Below, in pieces: positions 699 to 56,696 of a stretch of DNA of 64,000 nt. The stretch is taken from assembly GCF_006345805.1 (NCBI RefSeq), contig NC_042998.1, positions 77,500,001 through 77,564,000 of the forward strand, given 5' to 3'. Every line of letters starts with the position of its first letter. Within the stretch, counting starts at the first letter, position 1. A model generated the notes under the pieces. The model saw nothing but the letters and a program-made list of their open reading frames with translations, did not search any database and had not been told where the DNA came from. This stretch comes from Octopus sinensis (taxonomy: Eukaryota). The translations under genes and the position numbers were made by a program.

Positions 699-1797
699 TG
701 TTCAGTAGTTTTATTTTTATAGCGTGCTTTCACTTCACTACCGAGCGCAGCTCTGTGTGCCTTGGGTATGTGCTGTGATTTGTTGTGATGCTCTGATTGT
801 TATTTAATGGAAAGTGTTCTGCGTAGGATGTGTGCAGTGCCTAGTAGTGCAATTTTCTGTATGTTATATGTGTTTGTAAGTCCTGGTGTTTTTGTTATGT
901 ATTTGTCTGAATATTTTTTTTTATCATGCCTAATGCACCTACTATGATAGGAATTGTTTCTGTTTTCAGGTTCCACATTCTAGTTATCTCTATTTCCAGG
1001 TCTTTGTATTTTGAGAGTTTCTCCATTTCTTTTAGAGACACGTCGTCATCTGCCGGTATTGATACATCAAGTAGAAAGCATTTTTTTTCTTCATGATCTC
1101 TGACAACTATATCTGGTCTGTTGGCCTTAATTTCTCTATCTGTGTGTATCGGCATATCCCAGAGTATGGTTGCTTTCTCGTTTTCTATGACCTTTTCTGG
1201 TGTGTGCCTATACCATCTTTTTTCTGTTGTTATTCCATAATGTTGGCATAGCTTCCAATGTATGTAGGTTCCAACTCTGTCATGTCTGTGAATATATTCT
1301 TCTTAGCAGGACTGGGCAGCTAGAGATAATATGATTATTGTTTCTTGTCCATCTCCAAATATCTGCAGTTACTTGTTGTAATATTTCTTTTCATTACATG
1401 TTTTTGGTAATTTCTGGTGGGGAGGCTTTGGTTTGTGCTGCAATTAAAAATCCCTCTGTTTCTGCTTTGAGTCCTGAGTTTCTCAACCATTGCTGGGATT
1501 TTTCTTTGTCTATTTCTTTTGCGTTAGTTTAGTGCAGTATTTACCATGAAGGGGCTTTTCTTGCCATCGTTTTATCATGGCTCGTTGCTGTTCTTTTTAG
1601 TTTGGATTTCATTTGTTTTATAGCTTTTGTTGTTTCTCATCATCTTCTTCTTCTTCTTTGTGTTTATTAGGTGGTATGGTTTCTTGTTTGTATTGTCAGC
1701 TTCCTTAAATACTGAGAACAGTTTTTTGTTTTGCTCGTGTTTTGCTGCTATCTGGATCAGTTTTCCTTCCTTCTGAAGTAGGTATTTTGCAGTCCTA
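638..1797 (-). mobile_element. 5'-truncated Dong/R4-type RLE LINE (post-RT region, RLE endonuclease, 3' UTR, (TAA)n tail)
   Basis: ORF 895-1155 has RPDIVVRD..FLLDVSIP..KLSKYKDLE..IPIIVGALG (PD-(D/E)xK RLE domain); upstream minus-strand translation IGLQNYLLQKEGKLIQIAAKHEQ resembles the 51-kb copy; (ATT)n at 638-698 and 1797-1862. Confidence 0.88.
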
Positions 1798-3180: not shown

Positions 3181-3275
<95 letters not shown>

Positions 3276-3443
3276 TATATTTTATATTTCTATTTCCTTG
3301 TCTAATTATATTTACAATATATTTTGTATAATGCCTTTGCTGTTATGTAATGGTGTAATAAAGTATTGATTGGGTATCATCTGATGGTTGATGTTTGATT
3401 GATTTAAGTATGTTTCTCCATTTTCTAATTTTGTAGTATATAT

Positions 3444-3480
<37 letters not shown>

Positions 3481-3531
3481 GGCGGTGCCCCAGCATGGCC
3501 ACAGCTCCTGATTTGAAACTAGATGAAATAA
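3481..3531 (+). mobile_element. ~50-bp CR1 3'-terminal micro-insertion in (TA)n
   Basis: GGCGGTGCCCCAGCATGGCCACAGCTC..GAAACTAGATGAAATAA matches the CR1 3' end at 35911-35959. Confidence 0.8.
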
Positions 3532-3729
3532 TATATATATATAATATATATAATATATATATATATATTTATATTTTATATTTCTATTTCCTTGTCTAAT
3601 TATATTTACAATATATTTTGTATAATGCCTTTGCTGTTATGTAATGGTGTAATAAAGTATTGATTGGGTATCATCTGATGGTTGATGTTTGATTGATTTA
3701 AGTATGTTTCTCCATTTTCTAATTTTGTA

Positions 3730-3775
<46 letters not shown>

Positions 3776-3778
<3 letters not shown>

Positions 3779-3821
3779 GGTGCCCCAGCATGGCCACAGC
3801 TCCTGATTTGAAACTAGATGA

Positions 3822-3826
<5 letters not shown>
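3776..3826 (+). mobile_element. ~50-bp CR1 3'-terminal micro-insertion (duplicate of 3481-3531)
   Basis: Identical to 3481-3531. Confidence 0.8.
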
Positions 3827-3859
<33 letters not shown>

Positions 3860-3860
3860 T

Positions 3861-4071
<211 letters not shown>

Positions 4072-12410: not shown

Positions 12411-12710
12411 AATTACATGACTTACTGAAAGAACTATAGAAGTGGTGAAAACTGTTTCAAGATATCAATATTACTTACCCTGTTTCTTCTAGCACAGGCG
12501 CGCGTTCGCTTGCACACACCCACGCACGTACGCACACACGGAACGCGCGTACACCCCCACACACGTATATACGGTCGTGTCTGTATGTATTAAATGTCCT
12601 GCTATACACACGTAAGTACGAGTAGTATCAGATTGGCATTTAAAAAATTGAAGTAAATTATTGCTCTTTTTAAAATTACATATATCTTAATTTGAAATAA
12701 ATGTATGTAA

Positions 12711-12760
<50 letters not shown>

Positions 12761-12774
12761 ATACATACACACAT

Positions 12775-12805
<31 letters not shown>

Positions 12806-12826
12806 ATATATATATATATATGTATA

Positions 12827-13014
12827 GGGAAAGTTTACGAAAAAAACAAAAGACGAAGACAGGTGGTGTACAAAACAAACAGATGTAATAGTATAGCGCT
12901 CAGGAATAGAAAAGGTCTTTTACGTTTCGAGCCTACGCTCTTCTACAGAAAGGGAAACAGAAAAAAACAAGGAGAGAAAAAAATATGTGTAATGGCTAAC
13001 GATCTCTCTTGGCG
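12827..13014 (-). mobile_element. Hammerhead-bearing short repeat (Penelope pLTR-like terminus) in (TA)n
   Basis: Homologous by eye to 29578-29640, 49538-49880 and 55618-56210. Confidence 0.75.
12916..12952 (-). ncRNA. Minimal type-I hammerhead-like motif, variant core CUGUAGA
   Basis: CUUU-CUGUAGA-A-GAGC(GUAG)GCUC-GAAA-CG-U-A-AAAG: stems I and II pair; palindromic ACGU stem III. Confidence 0.65.
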
Positions 13015-13038
13015 TATACATATACATATACATATATG

Positions 13039-13090
<52 letters not shown>

Positions 13091-13365
13091 AGTGTGAATA
13101 TAGAGATAATTAGAAAGCAGCGATGAAACGAATAACGGGGATATACATAGTAAATAAATACATCGATAGTTATTGATATTACAGTATTACATTTAGCTAT
13201 ATTAATTCAGTTCAGAAGGAAAATCTTTTTTTGGGGAGCAGACACGGATGAGAATAGTTGGCTGTTTTGGACGAATGGTTATAATATACTGTAATATATA
13301 AAAATGATTATTGGTGTAATTTCACGTCTGCTGCCTCTATCTGAAAATAGGCTGTAGATTCGACC

Positions 13366-16125: not shown

Positions 16126-16259
16126 ATATATATATATATACCCATTATTAAAGAAAAATCATTTACCATTTACTCTGGGCTAGGTATCTCATTAAACTCT
16201 CGAGTTCTATACGCACGCAGTTTTCTGCACTTATCAGTCCCCTTCCTCCATTTGCTCTG

Positions 16260-16835
16260 TTTATGTATTGGCAATTACTGTCCACAAGTGGATAATGAGC
16301 TCCATGCATCGTATGGAGTTTCGTTGACTCCCTGTCCACTTCAGGATTCCAGCGCCATACAACACTATTGCGACTGCGCGCGACTTTAATGCTGAAATTA
16401 TGTTTCTGGCATTCAGTTTTGACGCTGATATTTTTCTCACTCGCCGCAGGTGCACTCTTTTTGTCTTTTCCTTCTTGTCGTGGTGTTTGACTCTCTTTGC
16501 CTCAAGTATTCCAAGATATTTATAGCTGGAATGAGTTTGAATTGCCTTCATCATTTATCTACTTGGCAACCAAATGCCTTCTGTCCTGGTATGCATCAGA
16601 GTACATTTTGAGATTCCAAACTCCATCTTAATATCATTGGAGAAAATCTACACAGACTGGATTAGGCCTCAGGTCGGCCATGAACAGCAAGTGGTTCAGT
16701 TTTCCCTTGCCACTTCCCAGAGCATATCCCAGATCATATCTCAACTTTGTTTTCCGTAGTATTTCATTCAGGGGAATCATTCCCAGCACGAATATCAGCA
16801 ACTTATCTCTGGAAGATTCCTCTCTGATTTTCATT
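16260..16835 (-). mobile_element. Dong/R4-type LINE fragment (RT core and thumb)
   Basis: RGIFQ..LIFVLGMIPLNEILRKT..KLNHLLFMADL; YKYLGILEA..RVRKISASKLNARNII.A..RAVAIVLYGAGILKWT. Confidence 0.8.
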
Positions 16836-16849
16836 ATTATCATTGTTAC

Positions 16850-17640
16850 TATTTGATGAAAACTCTGAGCTTATTTTACTGGGTATCATGGAAAGTGTCA
16901 GTTGTCCACAGCCAGCAAACTGAAATGACACTTATTTACCGATCACGCTTTAAGAAGCCCGCGAAGAATTTTTGCAGTTCCAAGTGATGTTGATTTTTGT
17001 AGGTTTTCTATCTTTACATTTGTACCAAGCTTTTTGCACCATGCTGATACCTCCAAGAGCGCCAATTACTATTGGTATCACATCTACTCTCCTCAATGAT
17101 CACGACCTTCGTATTTTCCACTTGAAATAGTCATAGTTATTTAGTCTTTGTTCTTCTTTCTCTTTGATCCTCTTGTCACCGGGACATGCTATGTCAATTA
17201 TCATGCATGTGCTTTTTTTACCACAACAATGTACGATTTCGGATATCTGGTCGGGTGATTGCACTGAATAATTGCATTTCACAAGATTTGGCAATTCTCA
17301 TTCTCGGCAATTCTTTGTGAGGTTTCTCATACCACGCCTTTGCACTTTGTAGGCCGTGATTTCCACGGAGCTCCCAATGGATCATTCTTGCCAAATTATC
17401 ATGTCGTCTTTTGTATTCGCGTTGTGCCAATTTCGGGCATTTGCTAACGAAATGCCATACCATTTCACCCCTCTCACCTCACATTCTACATTTGTCGCTG
17501 ACGGTATTGTTGTCTATTCTGCTCTTCACATAATTGGTCCTTAACGTTTGTTAATGAGCTGCGCATATAAGTGTTTCTCTCTCTATCTTCAGGTCACTCC
17601 GCTTCCTGCATGGCCACCGGTCTTCTGTATCTTAGTGGTT
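16850..17640 (-). mobile_element. Dong/R4-type LINE 3' fragment (Zn knuckle, RLE, 3' UTR)
   Basis: HFVSKCPKLAQREYKRRHDNLARMIHWEL; RPDI..IIDIACPGD; VIPIVIGALG; degenerate TAA tail near 16835-16860; ATT tract at 17644-17678. Confidence 0.82.
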
Positions 17641-17689
17641 AACATTATTATTATTATTATCATCATCATCATCATCATTGTCTTTCAAC

Positions 17690-18047
17690 TCTGTTTCCAT
17701 TTCTTGTGGAGTGTCTCTCTGACACTTAGGGCAGAGATACTGACTGTATACAATGATAGGCCATTAAAATAAAAGGGCACGATTGCTCATTTAGAAAGAG
17801 AAAAGGGGGAAAAGACAGAGAGAAAAAAAAGAAAAAACAAAAACAAATAAACAGCGAAAACAAAGTGGAAAAAAGAAAAGAAAATTCAGTGACAATGCTC
17901 TTCTCACTACGTGTGACGCACCAGTGAAGACAATCTTTTGGATTTCCTGCATGGGTGGTAAGTCAGTGATCATTCTCAAATAATTTTCAGGTCCTACTTT
18001 CCAAGTGCTTCGTCTTGAGATGCCACTATTATTATTATTTTTATTAT
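17690..18047 (-). mobile_element. Dong/R4-type LINE extreme 3' fragment
   Basis: YLRMITDLPPMQEIQKIVFTGASHVVRRALS; 3' UTR (CTTAGGGCAGAGA) resembles that of the 50-kb copy; ATT tracts on both sides. Confidence 0.72.
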
Positions 18048-18073
18048 TATTATTGTTATTATTATTATTATTA

Positions 18074-18135
<62 letters not shown>

Positions 18136-18185: not shown

Positions 18186-18785
18186 TCTCTTTATCACATT
18201 TAGTTGACGCTCCTGGAGTGTTGCAAGCGTAGCGGATTTGCTGCCTGCAGCCTTCAATACCATGTTATCCGTTCTTTTCATTTATTTAATACCTTCCTGA
18301 TTATTCTAGCCTAGGAAGCAAACCTTTTGTAACAGTTCTACTAGGTACTCTATTGCATTTTAATTTAAATTCCCTTTGAGGTCTTCTGATACTGTTCCCA
18401 AGGATCCTACAATAATTTTCCCTATCTTCACCGTCTTCATTTTCCATAGCCGGGCTATTTCGCACTTATCAGGGTTGTATTTGTCTATCTTTTCGCCTTC
18501 CTTCCAGATTTTCGTGGGTCAAAGGGGCATACAACATTAACAATATAGCATGTGCGATGCGCCTTCCACCATAACTAGGTTCGATCTTTTATGTTCTAGC
18601 AACTAATCTGTTTCGATTGGTAAATCCCAGAGGATTTTGCTAGTCTCCTATTCCACCACTCTCTGCGATTTGTGCTCATACCACGTATTATCTCTCTCTA
18701 GCTCCATTTTTCGCACATTTCCAACGTAGCACTTTCGCTCACTGATCATATCACCGCAACTTATAACAGTTCTGAGCATTTCGCT
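18186..18785 (-). mobile_element. Dong/R4-type LINE RLE fragment
   Basis: WYEHK..KILWDLPIETD; KEGEKIDKY..EIARLWKMKTV..IIVGSLGTV; tail is the ATT tract at 18048-18185. Confidence 0.72.
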
Positions 18786-18789
18786 AACA

Positions 18790-19430
18790 TTTCAAAAGTG
18801 TTGCATGAAGGTTACCAGCATGTAGCGAAAAAATATCCTCATTTCAAACAGATATTTCCTCAGCCGCGTATTGTAGCCTTTAGACGGAATAAGAATATAA
18901 GAGAATTATTGGCCTCTATATCTGACTCCAAGAAAACGAACATTGGCGTATCTACACGCTGTACCTTAAAGAAAAGCCGCAAGAGAGGTAATCCCTGAAC
19001 ATTGTGTAACAACGTGAGTGAATTGAATTCCATCAGAAATCATAACAGAAATGTTATGATTTATACAGAAGGTGAAACATGTAAAGATTCCCACTTGGTG
19101 TACGCTGCAGAATGCTCGAAACACAAATTAATTTATGTTGGTTGCACAACAGAACAATTAAAGGAAAGGTTTCATGGGCGCAGATTCGACGTCAGGCACA
19201 ATAACAGTAGTTCGACAGAACTTGCTGAACATTTCGTTTCAAGCAGCTGCAATTTCGAAGAAGACTTGAAAGTGCATATTCTCAGAAAATATTCTGAATC
19301 TGCTTCACTTTCACTTCTTCAGAATGTATGAGGAGAAATATGTTTGCGGTTTATTAACATCACGCCCTGGCGGAATGAATAAGATGACAGGAGAATATTA
19401 TCAAATTTATAAAAAACTGTTTGACTAAAT
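18790..19430 (+). mobile_element. Penelope-like element fragment, GIY-YIG endonuclease
   Basis: FPQPRIVAFRRNKNIRELL; TCKDSHLVYAAECSKHKLIYVGCTTEQLKERF..R..ELAEHF; EEKYVC.L.T..PGGMN. Confidence 0.85.
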
Positions 19431-19736
19431 TGTCTTTTTTCTCTCTTTTTCTTTCCTTTTTTCTGTCATCTTCTTTTTTCTGTCATCTTCTTTTTTCTGT
19501 TTTTTTCTTTTCTATCTTTTTCTTTTCGCCTGTTATAAAATTGTGACTTAAACATTGATGATGCCATTCCATCAACGTGTGGATGCTGGTTGCTCTCGTT
19601 CATACTTTACGTTTAAATTTCTGAAATTTTGAATTTTTATCACTTCATATTTCGAACTTGACAAAGACAAACATACTGTTGAAATAACGTTCAACTAATA
19701 AAATATCTTACAATCGAATCGCGCTCTTGTCTTGAC

Positions 19737-29577: not shown

Positions 29578-29640
29578 GGGAGAGTTCACAAAAAAAGACG
29601 AAGACAGATGGTGTAGACAACAAACAAATGTATTAGTATA
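29578..29640 (-). mobile_element. Terminal fragment of the hammerhead-bearing repeat family (ribozyme absent)
   Basis: GGGAGAGTTCACAAAAAAAGACGAAGACAGATGGTGTAGACAAC matches 12827 and 55618 ends. Confidence 0.7.
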
Positions 29641-29782
29641 ACCCTTGGCTTTTTATCTGATTACGCAAAAATATTCTTATATACACACGCTCTCTCTCTC
29701 TCTCTCTCTTTATATATATATATATATATATTGAGAGATAGAGATATATATAGATATACATAGATATAGATATCCATATATA

Positions 29783-33221: not shown

Positions 33222-33264
33222 ATATATATAATATATATATATATATTATATATATATATATTCA

Positions 33265-35959
33265 TATACAAGCCATGTAGGCAAGTTTGAAGACTGCCTT
33301 ATAAAAATAGAAGTTCTAATCACATTAGAACAACACATAAGTGTACTTCTTATGGGAGACTTCAATCTACCCAATGTCAGTTGGCCCGAGGGCCTTTCTC
33401 TCCTAGGAATGACAAGATGTGAACGAGGACAGGCGAGGTCCCTCCTGAACCTCATCAACACCCTGTACATGGAGCAAGTAATACTCCAACCAACCAGGGC
33501 AGGTAACACACTGGATCTCTGCTTCACAAATAATATGGATCTCATCCATAATGTGAAAGTGACACCGACACTACTCTCGGATCACAACATGGTAGAGCTG
33601 ACCATGTACGGGCCAAAGGAAAGCATAGACATGCAGCCTACAAGAAACCCTCAGAATCTTTCCAGCTTGAACTTCCATAAGGCAAACTGGAAACAAATTG
33701 AGAAAGAGATCCTTAAAAAAACTGGCCTGAGTGTCTCTCCTCGCCAGACATCGACGTGAAACTTCAACAATTCATGTCTGTAATGCAAGCCATATGCTAC
33801 AAATGTGTCCCAGAGAGAAAGGCCACTGTACACAAGAACAAAATCTCCAGAGAGAGGAAAATTCTAATGAGACGGCGTACAAAAATTTCAAATCGCCTAA
33901 ACAAACAAATTGAAAGCAGTGAAAAGTCCCGCCTGAAAATGAAACTGTTGGAAATTGAAAAAGGTCTGCAAATCTCCCATGAAAAGGAAAGAGCAGACAA
34001 AGAAGCCTGGGCTATAGACAACATAAAATCTAATCCCAGAGCTTTCTACAGGTATGCCAAAGAAACAGCTACGGTTCACTGTAGGATAGGGCCACTCCTT
34101 GAAAGGGATGGCACACTCACAGGAAATCCAATGAGGGTAAGTGAAATACTAAATGAGCAATTCAAGAGTGTTTCCACCCCACCCCTTGGGCATTTCCAAA
34201 TCAGCAATCCAACTGACTTCTTCACCACTGCAGATATGGGGTCTGAGGCGGCGATGATTGATTACATCAATATAAAGGAAGACGATGTAATAAAGGCTAT
34301 AGATGAGATGAAAACAAACTCAGCTACTGGCCCCGATGGATTCCCGGCAATCCTTCTAAAAGTATGTAAGAGAGTCCTAGCAAGACCACTGCAGTCTCTC
34401 TTTCAGAGCTTCCTTGCAACTGGCAAACTTCCAAGAAAACTGAAGGAAGGTAAAATATGCCCTATTCATAAAGGAGGTAGCAGAGCGGAGGCCAAGAACT
34501 ACAGACCTATCTCTCTGACCTCACACATCAGCAAGGTCATGGAACGAATAGTCAGAAGGAAAAAAATCGCCTTCCTTGAAGAAAATAACTTGCTGTCTGA
34601 CACCCAACATGGTTTCCGACCAGGAAGAAGCTGCTTAACTCAGCTCCTACAACACTATGACTGGGTGCTGAAACGACTGCTCAACCACTCAAATGTGGAA
34701 GTGATATATCTCGACTTTGCAAAAGCCTTTGATAAAGTCGATCATGGAATGATATGTCACAAACTGCGTGATCTTGGCATAGTTGGAAAATTGGGAGAAT
34801 GGCTTCATGACTTTCTGGAGGATAGAAGCCAGGTGGTAGTAGCCAATGGGGCCACTTCCATTAACACGCAAATAGTGAGCGGTGTTCCGCAGGGCACTGT
34901 TTTGGGACCACTACTGTTCATAATGGCCCTCTCAGACATGCCCTCAGCCACGCAGAGAGCCACGATCACAAGTTATGCAGATGATACAAAAGTTTCACAG
35001 GCAATACAGAACCCTGAAGACACTAAGCACCTGCAATGTGAGCTGGACAAAATATACAAGTGGGCTGAAAAGAATAGCATGTAGTTCAATGCTGAAAAGT
35101 TTTAAGCTTTATGCTATCAGCATGCAAAACTGAATGCAATACCCAATGAATACACTGGACCCGGAGGGATTTCAATCCCAGAGGCACAATCAGTGCGTGA
35201 CCTGGGTATTCACATGAGTGATGACGCGACCTTTCATGTACATGTTGCTAAACTGGCAATGAAATGTAGACGGCTGGCCGGATGGATTCTTAGAACCTTT
35301 AGAACAAGAGAACAAGAAACCATGATGGTCCTCTGGAAGACACTTGTCCTAAGCCACTTTGACTATTGCTCTCATCTATGGTCACCATCCAGTGTCAAGT
35401 TGATCACAGAACTTGGGGCGATCCAACGAAGCTACACGAAGAAGATAGCCTCTGTGCAGCATATAAGCTACTGGGAAAGACTCAAGAGATTAAAACTCTA
35501 TTCCTTGGAGCGTAGGCGAGAAAGATATGCCATAATATACATCTGGAAGATCCTGGAAGGACTTGTCCCAAACTTTGGCATCGAGAGTCACACAAATGCC
35601 AGAACCGGGCGCCACTGCGTGGTACCAAGGACTCCAAATTTGCCATCAAGATGTAGGACAAGATACTGTGATAGCCTGGGCTTCAAGAGGCCCACAGCTC
35701 TTCAATATCCTCCCGAAGGACCTGAGGGACCTGCATGGTGTAGATGCGGATGTCTTTAAAGTAGGACTGGATCTCTTCCTGTCAGGTGTCCCGGATGAAC
35801 CAACTTCACGGCAGGAGGTGCAGATGAGGGCAGCTGCATCGAATTCTCTCATGCACCAAATGGCAGTTGCTAAAAAGCATTTGTGAGGCAAAATCATGTA
35901 GCAAACCAAATGGCGGTGCCCCAGCATGGCCACAGCTCATGAGCTGAAACTGGAAAAAT
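33265..35959 (+). mobile_element. 5'-truncated CR1-type LINE (end of APE, RT, 3' UTR) with stops and frameshifts
   Basis: MGDFNLP..NTLDLCFTN..SDHNMV (APE); ATGPDGFP..NYRPISLTSHISKVME..QHGFRPGRSC..YLDFAKAFDKVDH..GVPQGTVLGPLLF..YADDTK (RT); 3' end GGCGGTGCCCCAGCATGGCCACAGCTC. Confidence 0.95.
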
Positions 35960-36645
35960 CATATGCGTGTGTGTATATATGTATACACACACACACACGC
36001 ATATATACATGTATGTATGTATGTATGTATGTATTCATTCATGTAACTCAATTTCTGTGTATATAAACATACATACAATATTTGATGTGGTGTACAGATA
36101 CTATATATTGAGGAAAAAAGAGGGAGTCACAATTTTGGATAATTCTTTATCAGCGCTTTTCTTCATTTATTGAACTCGACCAAGACAAAATGAAAGGGAT
36201 AAAAACAGAACATCCGATTCATATAAACGAATAAATAAACGTTTCTTTTTAAGATTTTGATTTTGTGTTGACGAGTTCCACAAACAAACGAGGCGTTATA
36301 AAGAATTATCCAAAATTCTGACTGCCTTCTTTTCTCAATATATACATATATATATATATATGCACCCACATGAACAACAGGAACATCCATGTACAAGTGG
36401 TGGCTTAATACCAGTTACATGGTTTCAAATATTCGTGGTTTATTCTCTTAAGTATATGCAATAAAACCTGGAAACCGGCAAGTTACATGTTTACATTTTA
36501 TGCTGAATAGGGATATGTCATTACGCCAAATGTTGCACATACAAGCGCACACGCACAACCGCACATGTGTTTAAGAATATATCTATATCTATATCATATC
36601 TATATCTACATCTATATCTCTATCTATCTATCTATCCATCTATCT

Positions 36646-36682
<37 letters not shown>

Positions 36683-36739
36683 TATCATCTATCTTCTATC
36701 TATCTATCTATCTATCTATATCTATCTATGTATCTATCT

Positions 36740-36828
<89 letters not shown>

Positions 36829-38184
36829 TATACATATATATATATACAAACATACATATACACATGGACACATAGCATACAAGTATATATATTTGTGCAC
36901 TTAGATACGTATAAATATGCGCATAAACATGAAGTATTCATGCATTGAAATGAGATCCTATATGCAATTAAATATGCATGCACTGAGGCAGACCTAAGTA
37001 CATTCACAGATATTGCACTCCAGCAAACGATTTCTGGGAAAACATATTACGTAACAGACAACACACATGTAAAGACGGTTAAGAGAATAACGCTTTCATC
37101 ATTCATATATTGGTTTCACATCATTGTTTTGCTTACACTTCTTTATTTTCAATTATGCTGTTTGGATCTTTTATTTTTTTTCTTTACATAATAATTCATA
37201 AAGAAGTAAATACTTCGACTGCCTTTATTTCTTTCGTAAACATTTTCTAGCATTTTATTTTTTCAACAATTAGCTTATATTTTTTATTCATATTTTCTAT
37301 ATTTAAGTTTGATTATTTATCTTTAGTTTTTGTTTCATTTTCTATCGAAGCTTTCTTTTTTCATTTTTCTAATTACATTTTTTAATGTACATCTCTTATT
37401 TTCTTTGAATGCTTTGCACTGCACCACACCACGTTATTGATATTGCTTGTAACTGCACATCTCATCATCTCCATAGGATTAATAAACTTTCACATGCACT
37501 GGCATAGGCGCTAAAACCATCTTTCTCCCTATCTAACCCCTAACACCCAAATTCCGCCTAACTCTTTCTCCGCATGTGTATATACATACTTATATGCATA
37601 CATATATACATACGTGCATACATACGCATACACCTATATACAGATATATTTATATATATATATATAAATACTAACAAGTGTGTGCGTGTGTGTGTGTGTG
37701 TGTGTATATAGTGTACAGGCTGTGTTTGCATCTATATTATATGTATAACAACATGTATGCTTACTTATCAGTTTTGGACTTGTCGACCTCTGAATGGAGG
37801 AAACATACGTAAAGAAAATAAACAAATGCACACATTCACACTCCCAAAGTGCACATATGTACACATTTGCATTTCCTGGCTGTCTACGAATGAAAGACCT
37901 CCATGAAGAAAAAAAACAAAGATATAATATCTATTGTTTCTGCTATAGATGCAATACTCGTGATCTACATGGAGAATTTATCGATGGAATCATATTTCTT
38001 TATCAATCTCGGAAAGATGTAAGACAAAGATGAGTTTGACGTCACTTGAATAAAGAACGAAAATAGTCATATTATATATCACAAGCTATTTTCTCTGATG
38101 CCCTAACAAAACTGCCAATCCACTGCTGTTTTAAAATCAAATTTTAATATTAGCCACATCAAAGTCAAAGAGCTTATAAAATCT

Positions 38185-45679: not shown

Positions 45680-46597
45680 CAACACCTACGTACGCGCATA
45701 CTCGCAGGCACGCGCACATACGCACTTACGACGCCGCTCGCGTTGCATACGCGTCGCATACACCTCGCCCTTGGACCTGACGAGACCTCCCGCCCGTTCC
45801 TGGGACCGTCGCGTGTCGTTGGGTTTTCCCACGCCTGTCTCCGCGGTACCACTCTTCCATCTTCCCCTCAGCTGGAGTCCTTTTTCCTTACCCTAACCCC
45901 CCCCTTTTTCGTTACACACACGCGCACACATATACACACCTTGCCTATATATATACATCACTCTTACACACATTCAATCTACTCATTAATACCACCACGA
46001 CACTGGACACACACACACACTACTACTCAACACACGCTGGCACGCTACATACGCCCCCACCCCTTCCCCTCCCTCCCTTCCTCCTTCCTTCTTTTTCTTA
46101 CTACTGACCTCCCTTCCCTTCCTTCCTTTTTCTTAGTACTGACCTCGTCTGCTAGCTGACCACTAGTCTCGCCCTACCTCACACGCCTACACACAGACGC
46201 ACACACTAACACACACATATTTTTTTGTTTTTCATCTCGCCTCACACACACACATACACACACGCACATGCACACACTCACACATACACACACATCTGTT
46301 GGGTTACCAACCTTGTCTCCACTCTTTTGCCTTTAAAAACCCACTTTGCTCTTGTTATCGTCAACATCCGCCTTTCACCATGTGCAACTCGTAAACACCA
46401 GTCGTCTTTTTTCTCTTTCCCTGTTGCCCGCTCTGGGATCTTTCTTTTCCCTCTCTTCCTTCTTTATGTTTCCGACGAAGAGCTCCGCTCGAAACGTCAT
46501 ACCTCCCTGCTTCCATCTCCTGAGCGCCTATTAATAATAATACTGTAATTGTTCCTGTTGTTGTTGTTTTTTTGTTTCCCTTTTGGATTAAAATTAT
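45680..46597 (+). mobile_element. Penelope-like 3' region: CA/pyrimidine-rich UTR, hammerhead, terminus in (TA)n
   Basis: Same layout as 55618-56210 on the opposite strand; sequence after the ribozyme (CCTGAGCGC) is homologous; 5' boundary approximate. Confidence 0.5.
46466..46503 (+). ncRNA. Minimal hammerhead motif, core CCGACGA (U4C), GUC site
   Basis: GUUU-CCGACGA-A-GAGC(UCC)GCUC-GAAA-CG-U-C-AUAC; stem I has one mismatch. Confidence 0.65.
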
Positions 46598-46643
46598 ATA
46601 TATATATATATATATTATGTATATATATATGTATATATATATA

Positions 46644-46681
<38 letters not shown>

Positions 46682-46687
<6 letters not shown>

Positions 46688-48140
46688 CCTACATATAATA
46701 TGTATATAATTAAGAGACAAAACCTTTAGTAAGTAATTCAATTAATAGTGAAAGGTATTATCTATAATAAATCATATAGAAAGAATTTAGATATATTACA
46801 ATAAATATTATCCTAAAAATCACTAAATTAAATAAACATTAAATTGACTACGCGTGTTTCGTGACTATATATTTAAATCGATGATTTTAAAATCGATAAT
46901 ATTAAAAGTTAATTTTAAACGTTAAACTAAGAGATTAGCGTTGCTAAGAAATCTGTCACGTTAAAACATAACGTAAATAATAAATATAGGATAAATAAAT
47001 AGAAATCTGTATTTTAGGGGTGAAAATAAATAAACTTGACGTGATTTACCATTTACTGAGAAAAAGTCTAAATTCTCAATAATTTAAAACTAAAACTTTA
47101 TACGTAATATAATAAAATAAATTTCGATAAATTAATATATATTCATCAATTTATTTATTTATTTTATAAACACCTTGGTTTAATCTTATTCTAGGTTACA
47201 CTTCATAATCTACGGCTAAATTATACTCATTATACTATTACAAATTATAACTATAAATTTGTAACATAAATCAGGGTTTATATATATATACGCAAATTAG
47301 ATAAACTTATTACATAAGTAATTTAACCTATGTCTACAATTAATTTTTCTCTCATCTAGGTAATTAATGAATATTTTTATTATTAGATAGTAATATCTGT
47401 ATAAATTCATTTGTACATTGTAAACAAAAATTATTACCCATTCGATAAGACTTAACTTTACAAACTATCTCCAAATTTAAATTATACTTAATTCCTTTAG
47501 ATTTCAATTCCCATATATATTTGCTAAGGCCAGTAGAACTAATCAATGTTTTATTCTTAAATGAATGCATGTGTTGAGCCACCATTAATTTAATTTTATT
47601 AGAAGTCGAGCCCACATAAATCGCATTTAAATTATAACTATTCCTATTAATACTATCATCTCTCAGAGATATAAAGCATTTATATACTACATCATCCACA
47701 TTACATTTATGTTTAAATTTACATTTTGTCTTATCTATGCATGTAGAATTAATTATATTCTGCTCATTATTATTATTGGAATAATTATTTAATTTGTTAA
47801 TGTAAAATTTATTCAGCTTCAATTTATTAAAAGAAGAAATAATGTTACCAACAGTGTTAGTAGTAGAATAACCAACTCCAAAATTATTACTAGAAAACTT
47901 GTTATTATAATTTTAAATCGAATTAATATCAACTTTTAATATTATCGATTTAAATATATAGTCACGAAACGCGCGTAGTCAATTTAATGTTTATTTAATT
48001 TAGTGATTTTTAGAATAATATTTATTACGATATATTTAAATTCTTTCTATATGATTTATTATAGATAATATCTTTCACTATTAATTGAATTACATAATAG
48101 AGGTTTTGCTTCTTAATTATAGACATATATTAGATATTAT
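46682..48140 (-). mobile_element. Penelope-like element fragment (GIY-YIG) bracketed by an inverted copy of its own 3' terminal ~230 bp
   Basis: ORF 47364-47822 CNVDDVVYKC..IYVGSTSN..HMHSFKNK..TGLSKYIWELK..CLQC; arms about 46682-46911 and 47922-48140. Confidence 0.88.
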
Positions 48141-48238
48141 ATATTTATATATTTTGAAATATTAATTTAGTATTGCTTAATTGAACTTTTCCCTGTAAGT
48201 TTGGAATTTTATATTCCCTACTATTAATAACATATGTA

Positions 48239-49198: not shown

Positions 49199-49316
49199 AT
49201 TATATATATATATTATCTATATATATATATATATATAATATACACACACTCACATGCACACACACACGCCTTCGTCTTTTGTCTATTTTCATAAAGCTTC
49301 CCGTTATATATATATA

Positions 49317-49367
<51 letters not shown>

Positions 49368-49368
49368 T

Positions 49369-49427
<59 letters not shown>

Positions 49428-49537
49428 TATATTATATTATATTATATTATATTAAATTAGAGATAAAACCACTATTAGGCAAATCAAACATTGAAAATCA
49501 TAACCCAATACATAGAAAAAAAAAATATATATATATA

Positions 49538-49880
49538 CAACGAACAGGTGCATTAGTTTAACGCTCGGGAAGGTGAGAGAGTCTTTTACGTTTCGAGCCT
49601 ACGCTATTCCACAGAAAGGAACACGAGAAATAAACACCGAGAGAATAAGAAAAAAAACTTTTGGAGCTAGCAGTCAATAATGGCGGCTGGCTGGACAAAG
49701 GTAGTTAGATAAGGGAGCTAGGAAGAAGGGGAGATTATAAAGTATTGGTGATCCGAAAACGAAGGGGCGCGGGCGTTAGTATGTGAGAGTGCGTGCCTGT
49801 GGATAGGGGCTGGTGTCTTTGATGTATGGATGTGTGCGTCTATAATGTGTGGGTGTGTGGATGATGGTGTGGGTGCTGGG
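49538..49880 (-). mobile_element. Hammerhead-bearing repeat (family of 12827 and 55618)
   Basis: Shared GTCTTTTACGTTTCGAGCCTACGCT..ACAGAAAG block; CA-rich upstream region on the minus strand. Confidence 0.7.
49582..49618 (-). ncRNA. Minimal hammerhead-like motif, variant core CUGUGGA
   Basis: CUUU-CUGUGGA-A-UAGC(GUAG)GCUC-GAAA-CG-U-A-AAAG; one stem II mismatch. Confidence 0.6.
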
Positions 49881-50148: not shown

Positions 50149-52728
50149 TATTATTATTGTTGTTATTATTATTATTATTATGTTTTTTCCTTCTTTCTTC
50201 AAATTTTCTTCCGTTTCTCGCCGAGTGTTTTCCATACACCTAGGGCAGAGAAGGGCATTGTATGCATTCCCAGATTACACGCGCAAATTCACAGATAAAA
50301 TATGTATTTAAAAATTAATAAATAAATTCATGGATGAATGTTATTTTCACAGCGATAGCGCTCTTCTCAGTACATGAGCCGTTCCAATTAATATGATTTT
50401 TTTGCACTTCCTGTAGGGATGGTAAGCCTGGAATCATTTTCAAATAGGTTTCATTGCCTTTTTTTTTATCATTCCTAGAGATCATACAATCACTGGTACT
50501 GTAGTCGCCTTGAGATGACACATTTTTTTCAATTTCCATTAGCAGGTCTTTATATTTACTAATCTTGTCAAATTCTTTCGCCGCTATATTGTGATCACAG
50601 AGAATACTCATGTCAATTAATAAACACATCCGTTTTGTCTGATCTTTTATAATGATATCCGGTTTATTGGCTTTTATAGTCATGTCGGTCTGCAAGGGGA
50701 AGTCCCATAGAATCGACACATTTTCTCCCTCAGTCACAGCTTCAGGATGATATTTATACCATTTGTCAACGGTTTTGATTTTATAATGCCGACATATTGT
50801 CCAGTATAAATACTGGCCGACTCTGTCATGTCTTGCTTTATATTCTGCAGGTGCTAAGACTCTACACCCTGAGATTATGTGGTCTATTTCAATCTCATCG
50901 TTACAGAATCAGCATTTTGGGTCAGCTCCATTTTTTATCACATTGGCTTGGTAGTTCCGGGTAAATAAGCTTTGGTCTTGAGCAGCTAATATGAAACCTT
51001 CACTCTCTGCTTTTAGCCCTGAACTTCGTAACCATTGGTGCGTGTGTTTCTGGTCGACATCAGCTTGTTTGCTACGGGCCACATACTTGCCATGGAGAGG
51101 TTTCTGTTCCCATCTGCTAGCTAAATTTTCAAGTGCTTTTGTCTTTGCAATTAATTTTCTTTTCTTTGCAGCTGCAGTTGGCGCATTTCATTCAGCCTGC
51201 TCAATCTGGTGGGTATGTAAGAGATCAGCAGCGAATTTTTTGCTCTCTTTGAGAATAGAGTGATGTTTCTTAGGTCTTTCATGCTTTTCAACAAGTTTTA
51301 GCATCCAATCGTTGGTTGTTTCAAGGTATTTGGCCAGTCCGATTGTGGTGGTTTTGTATGTGAGTTCAAGCTGGATCAAACCTCGACTTCCCTGAGCTCT
51401 GGGAAGGTAAAGGCGATCCACGTCTACCTTTGGATGGTGCATCTTATTACAAGTCAGTAGCTTGCGGATTTTCCTGTCAATTTTCATTATTTCACTAGTA
51501 TTCCAGTTGCTACTGAAGCTATAAAGAACAACTGGTACTGCTAAGGAATTTATGGCTAAAACCTTATTATATGCATTCAGCTCAGACTTCAGGACTGCTC
51601 GAACTCTTCTATAACATTTTTTCCTAACCTTCTCTTTCATGCTTGCATGCTGGATACCAGAGCCTTCATTTATTCCTAGGTATTTATAGGTCTGTTCCTG
51701 CTCAAGTTCCTTTATTACTATTTCGACATCTAATTCGATTGAACTAGACTTTACCAATTTCCCTTTCTTAAAAGTGGCTTTGGCACACTTTTCAAGGCCA
51801 AACTCCATCCCGATATCATCACTGAATCCTTTCACAGTATGTAATAATCCTTCAAGCTCTTCATCATCCTTGCCATATAGCTTTAGGTCATCCATATAAA
51901 ATAGATGGCTTATTTTCTTGTTGTCAATTTTGTAGCCATATCCTGTTCTATTCAGTTCACTTGTGAGTGGTATTAGTGCTATGCAGAATATTAGTGGTGA
52001 AAGTGAGTCACCTTGGAAAATTCCACAGTTTATGCTAATGTTGTTTGAGTGCAATACTCCATTAGGATGATATAATTGGTGCTTCATGTTCTATAGTGAC
52101 ATATTATACTTTAAAAAATCTGAAATCATAGGAGAAATTTTGAAAATGTCCAGCGATTTCAGAATCCACGAACGTGGTATGCTGTCAAAGGCTTTTTTAT
52201 AATCAATCCATGAAGAGCTGAGATTTCTGCGCTTGTTATGGCAGTTCTCAAGGATCATGCGATTAATTAGGAGCTGATCTTTGCATCCGTATGAGCCTCG
52301 TCTGCATCCTTTTTGTTCAGTGGGAAAGAGGTTATTCTCTTCCATAAACGTATATGTTTTCTCTACAATAGATGTCAAGATCTTATAGGTAGTAGATAAA
52401 CATGTTATAGGCTGATAGTTTTTTGGGTCTTTCGTTTTGTTATTTTTGGGGAGGAGGTAAGTAATACCATTTGCCATCCAATGTGGTGTTTTTTTTCGGG
52501 TCTTTCATAATACTATTAAATAGTATTACTAACATTTTGTGTGCGGACGAGAGTGATGAGAGCTAGAAATTTGGTACTCTATCAATACCAGGGGATTTCC
52601 ACTTATGAGCCTTCGTTAGTGCTCTCCTTAGATCGGCGATTGAGATGTCTTCCCATACCTGTTCTTGTAGATTTTTGTAATCATCTTGGGTGCGTTTGAT
52701 CCACTCATCTTGGGTGCGTTTGATCCAC

Positions 52729-52730
<2 letters not shown>
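50108..52730 (-). mobile_element. Largest Dong/R4-type LINE copy (RT, RLE, 3' UTR), 5'-truncated, with frameshifts, inside (ATT)n
   Basis: GITYLLPK..NYQPITCL..EQKGCRRGSYGCKDQLL..WIDYKKAFDS; GIFQGDSLSPLIF..HLFYMDDLKLY..YKYLG; ILWDFPLQTD..KPDIIIKD..LIDMSI..KISKYKDL; ATT tracts 50108-50180 and 52730-52910. Confidence 0.95.
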
Positions 52731-52807
<77 letters not shown>

Positions 52808-52824
52808 CATTATTATTATTATTA

Positions 52825-52859
<35 letters not shown>

Positions 52860-55397: not shown

Positions 55398-55453
<56 letters not shown>

Positions 55454-55478
55454 CACGTATATGTATGTATATATATAT

Positions 55479-55513
<35 letters not shown>

Positions 55514-55561
55514 CAGACACGTATATGTATGTATATATATACACATATATACATATATATA

Positions 55562-55617
<56 letters not shown>

Positions 55618-55618
<1 letters not shown>

Positions 55619-56210
55619 ACGGGAAGGTTTACGAAAATAAACAAAAGACGAAGGCAGGTGGAGTACAAACAAATGTATTAGTATGGCGCTCAGGAATAGA
55701 AATAGAACAAGTCTTTTACGTTTCGAGCCTACGCTCTTCGACAGAAAGATACACAGAAAAGAAACAAGGAGAGAAAAAAATGCGTGTAGGAGCTAACGGT
55801 CCATTATGGCGTACTGACTTCAGGCAGAAGTCAGAGGTTAGACGCTAGAGGGATAGTAGGGGAGATAACAGGGTCAAGTGACTTCGCCCCAACACGAAGG
55901 TCCGTGTGTGTATAAGAGAGTATGTATGTGCGTGTGAAAGAGGGCTGGTGGTCTGGACGTGTGTATGTATGTGTGAGTGTGGAGATATGGGGATGGGTGA
56001 GTGAGTGGTGTGTTGTGATATGATATGTGTATGTATGTGTAGGTGTAAAGATGTGGGGATGGGTGTGTGGGCAGTGTGCTGTGGGTGGTGTGTTGTGATG
56101 TGATGTGTAATGTCGTATGGTTTAGTGTAGTGTGGTGTGATGTTGTGGGGAGGGGGTGCGAGAGTGGGGAAAGCCCATATGGGGTGTGGGTTCGGCTGGG
56201 GGTTGGGGTG
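55618..56210 (-). mobile_element. Hammerhead-bearing repeat with CA-rich upstream region, both ends in (TA)n
   Basis: Longest copy of the family; terminus ..GTAAACCTTCCCGTT then TATATA. Confidence 0.75.
55712..55749 (-). ncRNA. Minimal hammerhead-like motif, variant core CUGUCGA
   Basis: UCUUU-CUGUCGA-A-GAGC(GUAG)GCUC-GAAA-CG-U-A-AAAGA; 5-bp stem I and 4-bp stem II perfect. Confidence 0.7.
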
Positions 56211-56636: not shown

Positions 56637-56696
56637 CTACGTACTGCAGTTTCAGCTATTAATATCACAAGGATATCTGTAGCTTCATCAGCGTAG
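56637..56696 (-). ncRNA. Intact type-I hammerhead ribozyme (minus-strand copy)
   Basis: Reverse complement of 57058-57117. Confidence 0.88.

What the first reader, a model, noticed from the sequence alone, without database searches (positions are those of the whole stretch)
12916..12952. Three-copy hammerhead family with non-canonical CUGUNGA core (A6U)
Seen: copies at 12916-12952, 49582-49618 and 55712-55749 all have U at position 6, which is A in the canonical core, while the freely variable position 7 is A, G and C. Stems I and II, GAAA, palindromic ACGU stem III and a GUA site are retained. A related copy at 46466 keeps A6. Inference: the family amplified with an A6U core, so it is either an active natural variant (perhaps cleaving as a dimer) or shows that cleavage is not needed for its spread.
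Basis: partly seen in the sequence, partly recalled or inferred. Interest (0 to 1): 0.75.

Follow-up and report, generated by a model that had tools for sequence, protein, structure and literature searches.

The report
Mutated minimal hammerhead in a retroposon
The window holds four copies of a roughly 190-base jumping element that carries a stripped-down hammerhead ribozyme motif of the kind known from Penelope-like retrotransposons; three copies share a change (A6 to U) at a normally invariant catalytic position, which probably cripples self-cleavage, so this is a mutated member of a known class, not a new ribozyme.

Summary
The motif lies on the minus strand at 12916-12953, 49582-49619 and 55712-55749, and on the plus strand at 46467-46503. 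It reads stem I, then C-U-G-U-N-G-A, an extra A, GAGC-loop-GCUC, GAAA, C-G, U-A, then stem I. The three U6 sites are not independent finds: they are copies of one dispersed retroposon of about 190 bp. The element ends next to (TA)n microsatellites and also occurs as 5'-truncated copies. The fourth copy keeps A6 but has U4C.

The motif matches the minimal type I hammerheads described for Penelope-like elements (PLEs): no loop 3, palindromic C15.2-G16.2, an unpaired base after A9, G10.1-C11.1 and a short stem I. Its 18 specified bases are identical to a family of more than 90 copies found in metazoan (probably coral) host DNA in metagenomes. That family has a CUGACGA or CCGACGA core and a GUC site.

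The hammerhead block is much better conserved than the rest of the element, so U6 was inherited from a source copy that went on amplifying.

Activity was not tested. Published mutagenesis says changes at A6 and in the U-turn give low activity, and PLE minimal hammerheads cleave poorly even with an intact core. I therefore favour "cleavage not needed for spread" over "active variant". The genome-wide consensus could not be checked. Interest is modest.

The parts
12826..13013 (-). Full-length copy 1 of the ~190-bp retroposon. Its 5' end reads 'tacgcca...' and its 3' end '...cgtaaactttccc'. It is flanked by AT-rich microsatellite on both sides.
   Evidence: nhmmer hit 13002-12826; alignment A1; sequence
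12916..12953 (-). Minimal hammerhead-like block of copy 1. Stem I 5' arm 12949-12952 (CUUU); core CUGUAGA 12942-12948 (U6 at 12945); extra A 12941; stem II GAGC 12937-12940 and GCUC 12929-12932, with loop GUAG; GAAA 12925-12928; C15.2-G16.2 12923-12924; U16.1 12922; A17 12921 (predicted cleavage 3' of it); stem I 3' arm AAAG 12917-12920.
12897..12904 (-). Second conserved block CCUGAGCG, about 13 nt downstream of stem I. It is present in all four copies. Function unknown.
55621..55812 (-). Full-length copy 2 of the retroposon. It has the same 5' start as copy 1. (TA)n lies at its 3' end (55382-55618).
55712..55749 (-). Hammerhead-like block of copy 2: core CUGUCGA 55738-55744, 5-bp stem I (UCUUU/AAAGA), stem II GAGC/GCUC, GUA site (A17 at 55717).
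49534..49651 (-). Copy 3, incomplete at both ends (model positions 20-137). TA-rich sequence lies at its 3' side.
49582..49619 (-). Hammerhead-like block of copy 3: core CUGUGGA 49608-49614. Stem II 5' arm is UAGC (49603-49606), so G10.1-C11.1 is replaced by a U/C mismatch. GUA site (A17 at 49587).
46422..46599 (+). Copy 4, a diverged member of the family on the other strand. (TA)n lies at its 3' end (46595-46708).
46467..46503 (+). Hammerhead-like block of copy 4: core CCGACGA 46472-46478 (A6 kept, U4C), extra A 46479, stem II GAGC/GCUC with loop UCC, GAAA 46491-46494, CG, GUC site (C17 at 46498). Stem I is poorly paired.
29578..29646 (-). 5'-truncated copy with the 3' third only and no hammerhead block. 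It ends '...ctctccc' followed by (TA)n.
49265..49301 (+). 5'-truncated copy (last ~37 nt), inverted relative to copy 3. It ends '...cttccc' next to (TA)n 49305-49452.
18999..19328 (+). Remnant of a GIY-YIG endonuclease ORF of PLE type. It shows this genome has had PLEs, which are candidate mobilisers. It is not physically linked to any copy.
   Evidence: Pfam GIY-YIG E=0.0026, below the curated cut-off. Four of six long relatives scanned carry a C-terminal GIY-YIG domain, and three of them also RVT_1.

Best explanation
These are dead-on-arrival genomic copies of a short (~190 bp) non-autonomous retroposon, or the 3' part of a longer element. Its RNA carries a minimal type I hammerhead motif of the Penelope-like-element (PLE) class.

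Proposed mechanism (inferred):
1. The element is transcribed in the hammerhead sense.
2. It is copied back into DNA by target-primed reverse transcription starting at its 3' end, at or next to (TA)n microsatellites.
3. The enzyme comes in trans, most likely from a PLE reverse transcriptase/GIY-YIG endonuclease.
4. This gives a fixed 3' end and occasional 5' truncation.

In an intact relative, two motifs would pair through the self-complementary ACGU to build helix III, then cleave after GUH. In the subfamily seen here, a source copy acquired A6U and kept producing copies. The fourth, older copy carries U4C instead. The U6 core is probably catalytically crippled, so self-cleavage was not required for these insertions. 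The strong conservation of the block suggests it still mattered to the source element, for a reason not yet known.

Shown: family membership of the copies, their anatomy, orientation, 3' ends, block conservation, and homology to canonical-core minimal hammerheads. Inferred: the mobilising enzyme, loss of activity, and any residual role.
For: One repeat family:
- Four motif-bearing copies plus two 5'-truncated copies (nhmmer; alignment).
- Flanks are unrelated apart from microsatellite.

A retroposon read in the hammerhead sense:
- Five copies end in 'YttcccN' next to (TA)n.
- Two copies keep only the 3' end.
- There are no tandem arrays of about 190 bp.

PLE-type minimal hammerhead traits, all listed in PMC4209133 and all present:
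- no loop 3;
- palindromic 15.2-16.2;
- an unpaired base between A9 and G10.1;
- G10.1-C11.1;
- a 4-5 bp stem I.

Homology:
- GAAGAGC-N3/4-GCUCGAAACGU recovered at least 120 metagenome loci.
- About 90 of them form one family with CUGACGA or CCGACGA cores and GUC in 84 of 92.
- They lie on metazoan host contigs.
- Copy 4 differs from that family essentially only in loop II.

Constraint on the block:
- 2 of 38 columns vary among the three U6 copies, against 47 of 92 outside (p=1.6e-7).
- Counting substitutions only, pairwise p = 0.024, 0.0005 and 0.0003.

Precedent for a non-canonical core amplifying: in the related family U4 is T in 64 copies and C in 59, as two subfamilies with distinct flanks.

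Activity:
- A natural A6C variant cleaves at <0.1 per min (PMC3088659).
- CUGA-turn mutants have low activity (PMC9901934).
- PLE minimal hammerheads cleave poorly even as dimers (PMC4209133).
- Naiad PLEs proliferate without canonical hammerheads and prefer (TA)n targets (PMC8557442).
- All copies span the predicted cleavage site, so they were not copied from a monomeric RNA cut there.

PLEs exist in this genome: GIY-YIG remnant at 18999-19328.
Against: - No copy lies in a recognisable PLE pseudo-LTR or in tandem. The reverse transcriptase between copies 3 and 2 looked by eye like an R2/restriction-like-endonuclease LINE, not a PLE (Pfam finds only RVT_1 there).
- Stem II is 4 bp, shorter than the 6-8 bp reported as typical for PLE minimal hammerheads.
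- Only four copies could be examined. The true subfamily consensus at position 6 is therefore unknown.
- Strong conservation of the block despite U6 is not what a purely dead motif predicts. It leaves room for a functional U6 motif.
- No stem covariation was seen, either here or in the related family (only A-U to G-U at 10.2-11.2).
- Rfam hammerhead models do not match. They also miss canonical-core relatives, so this carries little weight.
Confidence: 0.62

Rival explanations
1. The U6 motif is a functional natural hammerhead variant. Two copies in one transcript, or two transcripts, pair through ACGU to form helix III and cleave after GUA despite U at position 6. This processing is part of the element's life cycle.
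For: - The block is far better conserved than the rest of the element in the U6 subfamily.
- The only core position that varies among the three copies is N7, the one position free to vary.
- Stem I, stem II, GAAA and the UH site are kept in two of the three copies.
- Rare natural core variants with residual activity are documented (PMC3088659).
Against: - Changes at A6 and elsewhere in the CUGA turn give low activity in every published data set I could read.
- No paper in the library reports a natural A6U hammerhead.
- In the related family, A6 is A in 121 of 127 copies and U in 2.
- The copies here are single, kilobases apart and never in tandem.
- A 4-bp intermolecular ACGU helix is weak. 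ViennaRNA prefers a rod-like fold in which U4-G5-U6 pairs with A15.1-C15.2-G16.2.
- All genomic copies span the predicted cleavage site.
Confidence: 0.12
2. The conserved half of the motif (G8-A9-A, stem II, GAAAC-GU) is kept for a non-catalytic reason, for example as a recognition or priming structure for the reverse transcriptase or as an internal promoter element. Under this reading the U-turn half (C3-A6) is free to change.
For: - All 18 bases of that half are identical between copy 4, the U6 copies and the metagenome family, while the U-turn differs (U4C or A6U).
- U4C and canonical subfamilies are equally abundant in the related family.
- The role of PLE minimal hammerheads in vivo is described as unknown (PMC7761336).
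- In vitro cleavage is poor (PMC4209133).
Against: - In the related family, A6, G5 and C3 are still well conserved in copies that were not selected by the search pattern. The U-turn is therefore not generally free.
- No protein-binding or promoter evidence exists.
- The resemblance of GGCUCGAAAC to a pol III B box is partial, and no tRNA-like structure was found (ARAGORN; Rfam).
Confidence: 0.15
3. The resemblance to a hammerhead is accidental. A repeat family happens to contain CUGUNGA...GAAA with short complementary stretches.
For: - The core fails the consensus in every copy.
- The stems are only 4 bp and show no covariation.
- Rfam finds nothing.
Against: - The descriptor gave 0 hits in 300 shuffles. 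My analytic estimate, not a tool result, is about 1.5e-4 per window.
- The motif has class-specific traits that were not part of a generic hammerhead search, namely the extra base after A9 and the palindromic 15.2-16.2 (PMC4209133).
- Its 18 specified bases are identical to a large canonical-core family in other animals.
- The older copy has A6 and a GUC site.
Confidence: 0.03
4. The element is a tRNA-derived SINE. The conserved blocks are pol III A and B boxes read on the opposite strand (TAGCGCTCAGG ... GTTTCGAGCC).
For: Partial matches to the A-box and B-box consensus lie about 27 nt apart on the plus strand of copies 1-3 (by eye).
Against: - ARAGORN finds no tRNA-like gene.
- Rfam at E<=10 finds no tRNA or SINE family in 12700-13200.
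- No T-arm can be drawn.
- The 3' end and the 5' truncations show the RNA sense is the hammerhead strand, antisense to these boxes.
Confidence: 0.03

Closest known systems
Minimal type I hammerhead motifs (min-HHR) of Penelope-like elements and their dispersed solo copies (Cervera & De la Pena 2014, PMC4209133; Lunse, Weinberg & Breaker 2017, cited but not readable here)
   Same: - No loop 3, and self-complementary 15.1-16.1 (ACGU).
- Unpaired base between A9 and G10.1, and a G10.1-C11.1 pair.
- Stem I of 4-5 bp without a defined loop 1.
- Mostly dispersed single copies, in an invertebrate-type genome that also holds PLE remains.
- Association with (TA)n, 5' truncation and an inverted partial copy, as described for PLEs (PMC8557442).
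- 18 of 18 specified bases shared with a large canonical-core family.
   Different: - The core is CUGUNGA (A6U) in three copies and CCGACGA (U4C) in one.
- Stem II is 4 bp rather than 6-8 bp.
- No copy sits in a pseudo-LTR next to a reverse transcriptase/GIY-YIG ORF, and none is in tandem.
- H17 is A in the U6 copies.
Metazoan non-LTR retrozymes (Cervera & de la Pena 2020, PMC7229834)
   Same: - Short (170-400 nt), non-coding, AT-rich non-autonomous elements with a type I hammerhead.
- Thought to be mobilised by PLE enzymes.
   Different: - Retrozymes are tandem repeats with canonical hammerheads (stable or dimeric helix III, loop-loop contacts), and they produce circular RNAs.
- The copies here are single and dispersed, with a minimal motif, a mutated core and a defined 3' end next to (TA)n.
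Schistosome Sm-alpha/Sj-alpha SINE-like retroposons with hammerheads (Ferbeyre et al. 1998, cited in PMC6765202)
   Same: A short interspersed retroposon that carries a hammerhead motif internally.
   Different: - Sm-alpha hammerheads have the canonical core, a real helix III and proven activity.
- Sm-alpha also has a pol III promoter region.
- None of these is seen here.
Natural hammerheads with core substitutions (Perreault et al. 2011, PMC3088659)
   Same: A substitution at the otherwise invariant A6 in a natural sequence (A6C in phage Bcep176).
   Different: - That case is a single bacterial-virus locus with measured, low activity.
- Here the base is U, it is shared by an amplified eukaryotic repeat subfamily, and activity is unmeasured.

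Membership tests
Hammerhead ribozyme (catalytic definition) | Conserved box C3-U4-G5-A6-N7-G8-A9 | tested here: not met
   The box reads CUGUAGA, CUGUGGA and CUGUCGA (U6), and CCGACGA (C4). Every copy has one departure at an invariant position.
Hammerhead ribozyme (catalytic definition) | Conserved box G12-A13-A14 followed by A15.1, with U16.1 and a non-G base at the cleavage site | tested here: met
   GAAA, then C-G, then U, then A (three copies) or C (one copy), in all four copies.
Hammerhead ribozyme (catalytic definition) | Three helices around the core (I, II, III) | tested here: inconclusive
   - Stem I is 4-5 bp in three copies and poor in copy 4.
- Stem II is 4 bp in three copies, with its first pair broken in copy 3.
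- Helix III is possible only between two molecules, through ACGU.
- There is no covariation.
Hammerhead ribozyme (catalytic definition) | Site-specific self-cleavage | not testable with these tools
   Needs in vitro transcription and cleavage assays. The literature predicts low activity for A6 or U-turn changes.
Hammerhead ribozyme (Rfam covariance models) | Score at or above the gathering threshold of an Rfam hammerhead family | tested here: not met
   No hit at gathering threshold in the window, nor at E<=10 in 12700-13200. The same models also miss canonical-core minimal hammerheads in 8 related loci at E<=1, so this test has no power for the minimal class.
PLE-type minimal hammerhead (Cervera & De la Pena 2014) | No helix III or loop 3 of its own; positions 15.2-16.2 palindromic | tested here: met
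   A-C-G-U directly follows GAA in all four copies.
PLE-type minimal hammerhead (Cervera & De la Pena 2014) | Unpaired nucleotide between A9 and G10.1 | tested here: met
   An extra A in all four copies.
PLE-type minimal hammerhead (Cervera & De la Pena 2014) | Conserved G10.1-C11.1 pair | tested here: met
   Present in three of four copies; U/C mismatch in copy 3.
PLE-type minimal hammerhead (Cervera & De la Pena 2014) | Short stem I (4-5 bp) and enlarged stem II (6-8 bp) | tested here: inconclusive
   Stem I of 4-5 bp is met. Stem II is only 4 bp. The related metagenome family also has 4 bp.
PLE-type minimal hammerhead (Cervera & De la Pena 2014) | Location in the pseudo-LTR of an element encoding reverse transcriptase plus GIY-YIG endonuclease, or as solo or truncated derivatives of such elements | tested here: inconclusive
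   - No reverse transcriptase/GIY-YIG ORF lies next to any copy.
- The nearest GIY-YIG remnant (18999-19328) is 6 kb away on the other strand.
- The solo-copy state with (TA)n association and 5' truncation is compatible (PMC8557442).
- A parent element could not be sought in the source genome.
PLE-type minimal hammerhead (Cervera & De la Pena 2014) | Sequence homology to minimal hammerheads with a canonical core | tested here: met
   18 of 18 specified bases are identical to a family of about 90-140 copies with CUGACGA/CCGACGA cores and a GUC site.
Metazoan non-LTR retrozyme | Head-to-tail tandem repeats of 170-400 bp, each with a canonical type I hammerhead | tested here: not met
   TRF shows no ~190-bp array at any copy. 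The copies are single and 3-30 kb apart.
tRNA-derived SINE | tRNA-like 5' region with pol III A and B boxes in the sense of the retroposed RNA | tested here: not met
   - ARAGORN finds 0 genes.
- No tRNA hit at E<=10.
- Box-like strings lie on the strand antisense to the retroposed RNA.

The most novel reading that the evidence does not exclude
A minimal hammerhead with U at position 6 is kept under selection in an amplifying retroposon lineage. That would mean one of two things. Either the dimeric PLE-type hammerhead tolerates A6U in vivo, making this a genuinely new active core variant. Or the G8-stem II-GAAAC-GU half of these motifs has a conserved non-catalytic job, such as recognition by the PLE reverse transcriptase. 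The second option would also explain why U4C subfamilies amplify equally well in other animals, and why these motifs cleave so poorly in vitro.
Probability: 0.2. Interest if true: 0.6.

Novelty: new member of a known kind. Interest (0 to 1): 0.3.

Why it matters
The in vivo role of the thousands of minimal hammerheads in animal genomes is described as a mystery (PMC7761336). A subfamily that kept amplifying, and kept the motif conserved, after losing an invariant catalytic base would be a natural experiment. So would a parallel U4C subfamily in other animals. Both would bear on whether self-cleavage is needed for these elements to spread, or whether the motif serves another purpose. On the present evidence, this is one more mutated member of a known class, seen in only four old copies.

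Tried and rejected
- **Rfam.** Gathering threshold on the whole window and E<=10 around copy 1 gave no hammerhead. A control on canonical-core relatives also gave none, so this test is uninformative.
- **PLE framed by copies 3 and 2.** I tested whether they frame a PLE, since both are on the minus strand with a reverse transcriptase between them. Rejected: Pfam finds only RVT_1 there and no GIY-YIG domain, and by eye the ORF tail looks like an R2/restriction-like-endonuclease LINE.
- **More copies from the same species.** All attempts failed:
  - an 18-mer in viral contigs, 0 hits;
  - a 22-mer in metagenomes, 0 hits;
  - a 20-mer in prokaryotic genomes, one chance bacterial hit, L125;
  - protein searches with two LINE ORFs, best identities only 71% and 66%, and the fetched contigs L001-L004 hold no family copy.
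- **tRNA-SINE reading.** Rejected (and strand logic).
- **Similarity to LINE 3' ends in the window.** None found.
- **PLE ORFs next to the related metagenome copies.** Mostly solo copies next to host genes.
- **Dimer folding.** RNAcofold gave generic hairpin-duplex dimers, not an ACGU helix III.
- **Register shift.** Treating the U as an insertion fails, because G8 and A6 would then be lost in the other copies.
- **Literature access.** The Lunse et al. 2017 paper and the supplements of PMC4209133 are not held.

Full report
**1. What is in the sequence**

The motif is on the minus strand at three sites. Read 5'->3', copy 1 is CUUU-CUGUAGA-A-GAGC-GUAG-GCUC-GAAA-CG-U-A-AAAG (12953->12916). Copy 2 (55749->55712) has CUGUCGA and a 5-bp stem I. 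Copy 3 (49619->49582) has CUGUGGA and UAGC instead of GAGC, which breaks the G10.1-C11.1 pair. The related copy is on the plus strand (46467-46503). It reads CCGACGA-A-GAGC-UCC-GCUC-GAAA-CG-U-C and has a poorly paired stem I.

Five points need adding:
- the strand of each copy;
- the extra A after A9;
- the broken stem II in copy 3;
- U4C in copy 4;
- 'stem III' is only the loop-less, self-complementary ACGU.

**2. Chance**

A descriptor for a loop-less hammerhead was run on both strands. It required at most one core mismatch, an optional extra base, stem II of at least 4 bp closed by G-C, GAAA, a complementary 15.2/16.2, U, a non-G base, and stem I of at least 4 bp. It found only copies 1 and 2, and nothing in 300 dinucleotide shuffles of the window. 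My analytic estimate is about 1.5e-4 hits per window.

A much looser descriptor added only obvious noise. The string GAAGAGC-N3/4-GCTCGAAACGT with up to three mismatches matches only the four copies, against 0.00-0.02 expected.

**3. One family, not three finds**

nhmmer with a seed alignment shows that all four motifs sit in copies of a single dispersed repeat of about 190 bp:
- 55621-55799 (-)
- 12826-13002 (-)
- 46422-46599 (+)
- 49534-49651 (-)

There are also two short fragments, 29578-29646 (-) and 49265-49301 (+). Flanks are unrelated apart from microsatellite.

In the hammerhead sense, copies 1 and 2 start at the same 'tacgcca'. Five copies end in '...YttcccN' directly next to (TA)n, and the two fragments keep only that 3' end. 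There is no tandem array. This is the signature of a retroposon whose RNA is in the hammerhead sense and which is reverse-transcribed from its 3' end. The hammerhead block lies in the middle, so every copy spans the predicted cleavage site.

ARAGORN finds no tRNA-like gene, and Rfam finds no tRNA or SINE family. The A/B-box-like strings lie on the wrong strand.

**4. What kind of hammerhead**

Cervera and De la Pena (PMC4209133) defined minimal type I hammerheads of Penelope-like elements (PLEs). Their traits are:
- no helix III or loop 3;
- palindromic 15.2-16.2;
- an unpaired base between A9 and G10.1;
- a conserved G10.1-C11.1 pair;
- a stem I of 4-5 bp;
- action as dimers with low activity.

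They occur by the thousand, mostly as dispersed single motifs, and shrimp PLEs are among the carriers. The window motif has all of these traits except the longer stem II.

PLEs also show 5' truncation, adjacent inverted partial copies and a bias for (TA)n targets (PMC8557442). All three are echoed here.

The window holds a remnant GIY-YIG ORF at 18999-19328. Its Pfam E-value is 0.0026, below the curated cut-off. Of six long relatives scanned, four carry a C-terminal GIY-YIG domain, three of them together with RVT_1, which is the PLE architecture. It is not linked to any copy.

The reverse transcriptase between copies 3 and 2 looked by eye like an R2/restriction-like-endonuclease LINE. Pfam found only RVT_1 in it and no GIY-YIG domain.

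**5. Relatives elsewhere**

The source species could not be reached. About 90 of them form one family:

GCU-C[U/C]GACGA-A-GAGC-UAAC-GCUC-GAAAC-GUC-AGC

They lie on contigs that also carry TRIM-NHL, bHLH and Pogo-type ORFs, so this is animal host DNA. The sample series suggest coral. That fits the more than 6000 type I motifs, mostly minimal, reported in Acropora (PMC7229834).

Copy 4 of the window differs from this family essentially only in loop II.

An HMM census gave 141 copies:
- A6 is A in 121 of 127 copies and T in 2.
- U4 is T in 64 copies and C in 59.
- The U4 states are split between two subfamilies with distinct flanks.

A subfamily with a non-canonical core has therefore amplified as well as the canonical one in another animal.

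Some copies form head-to-head palindromes (L030 213-281). Rfam at E<=1 detects none of these canonical-core motifs, so Rfam's silence on the window means little. Pair counts in this family are compatible with stems I and II, but the only change seen is one-sided, A-U to G-U.

**6. Is the U6 state inherited, and is the block constrained?**

Among the three U6 copies, the 38-nt block has 2 variable columns: N7 and G10.1 in copy 3. Outside the block, 47 of 92 columns vary (Fisher p=1.6e-7). Counting substitutions only, the pairwise tests give p=0.024, 0.0005 and 0.0003.

Three parallel A-to-T changes are implausible. U6 was therefore present in the source that produced these insertions, and the block was kept while the rest of the element drifted. 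It also argues that the block mattered to the source element.

The test cannot say that the function was cleavage. With four old copies (15-35% divergence outside the block) it cannot give the genomic consensus either.

**7. Activity**

Nothing here measures activity. The readable literature gives four pointers:
- A natural A6C variant has k_obs below 0.1 per min, in line with earlier core mutagenesis (PMC3088659).
- In a comprehensive single- and double-mutant scan, all CUGA-turn mutants had low activity except the C3-G8 swap (PMC9901934).
- Canonical PLE minimal hammerheads cleave poorly even as dimers (PMC4209133).
- No natural A6U hammerhead is reported in the searchable library.

ViennaRNA folds the U6 block with stems I and II plus an extra U4-G5-U6 / A15.1-C15.2-G16.2 pairing, which closes the core. 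The copies are not in tandem, so a cis dimer is unavailable at these loci.

**8. Verdict**

The finding is a real hammerhead-derived motif. It is best filed as a new, core-mutated member of the known class of PLE-type minimal hammerheads, carried by a short (TA)n-associated retroposon.

It is also unsurprising for this class, because Naiad PLEs proliferate without canonical hammerheads (PMC8557442).

The conservation of the block despite U6, together with the parallel U4C subfamily elsewhere, leaves a modest chance of something more interesting: a tolerated core variant, or a non-catalytic role for the conserved half of the motif. A genome-wide census and simple cleavage assays would settle it.

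Noticed in passing
window 12897-12904(-), 49562-49569(-), 55687-55694(-), 46519-46526(+): A second conserved block, CCYGAGCG, lies about 13-20 nt downstream of the hammerhead block in all four copies. It repeats the GAGCG of stem II, so it could pair with GCUC as an alternative helix. Its function is unknown.
   Followed up: partly
window 18702-19328 (+): Remnant ORF with a weak GIY-YIG match. Four of six long relatives scanned carry a C-terminal GIY-YIG domain, three of them with RVT_1, i.e. a Penelope-like element endonuclease fragment. Downstream lies a T-rich 17-bp repeat (19456-19511) and (TAT)n.
   Followed up: partly
window 50318-52826 (-); also 898-1302 (-) and 16166-18075 (-): Decayed LINE copies. 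The 50318-52826 copy has a Pfam RVT_1 match; the other two were not scanned. By eye they carry a CCHC motif (HIISGC...RH) and a restriction-like endonuclease tail (R2/NeSL-like). The closest database proteins are only 71% identical.
   Followed up: partly
window 33232-35883 (+): A LINE with endonuclease/exonuclease/phosphatase and reverse-transcriptase domains, including a 442-aa open frame. It is followed by an (AT)n array at 36577-36846. The best named relatives are from a cephalopod (Argonauta hians, 57%) and a crab (Chionoecetes opilio, 43%).
   Followed up: partly
window 56463-56821 and 56933-57291: A 359-bp inverted repeat, 99.7% identical, with arms 111 bp apart. It is either a very young hairpin-forming duplication or an assembly artefact.
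   Followed up: no
window 46670-46901 and 47924-48152: Inverted repeat of about 230 bp (90-92% identity) enclosing about 1 kb, immediately 3' of copy 4. It may be the terminal inverted repeats of a DNA transposon.
   Followed up: no
whole window: Extreme microsatellite load: 66 TRF rows at score 80 or above in 64 kb, mostly (TA)n, (TAT)n, (ATCT)n and (CA)n. GC is 35% and CpG observed/expected is 0.76. This resembles a decapod-crustacean-type genome, but the species could not be identified.
   Followed up: partly
loci L005-L124 (metagenome contigs, probably coral host DNA): The related minimal-hammerhead family is split almost evenly between a canonical CUGACGA core and a CCGACGA (U4C) core. 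The two are subfamilies with different flanks, and some copies form perfect head-to-head palindromes (e.g. L030 213-281).
   Followed up: partly
loci L008, L009, L010, L011, L017, L023, L030, L063: Rfam 15 hammerhead models do not report canonical-core minimal hammerheads (no helix III) even at E<=1. This whole class is invisible to standard Rfam annotation.
   Followed up: yes
window 3235-3941: A 294-bp unit repeated 2.1 times and an 84-bp unit repeated 2.4 times (GGCGGTGCCCCAGCATGGCCACAGCTCCTGAGCTGAAACTAGATGAAATA...), both embedded in (TA)n. This may be another microsatellite-associated repeat family.
   Followed up: no
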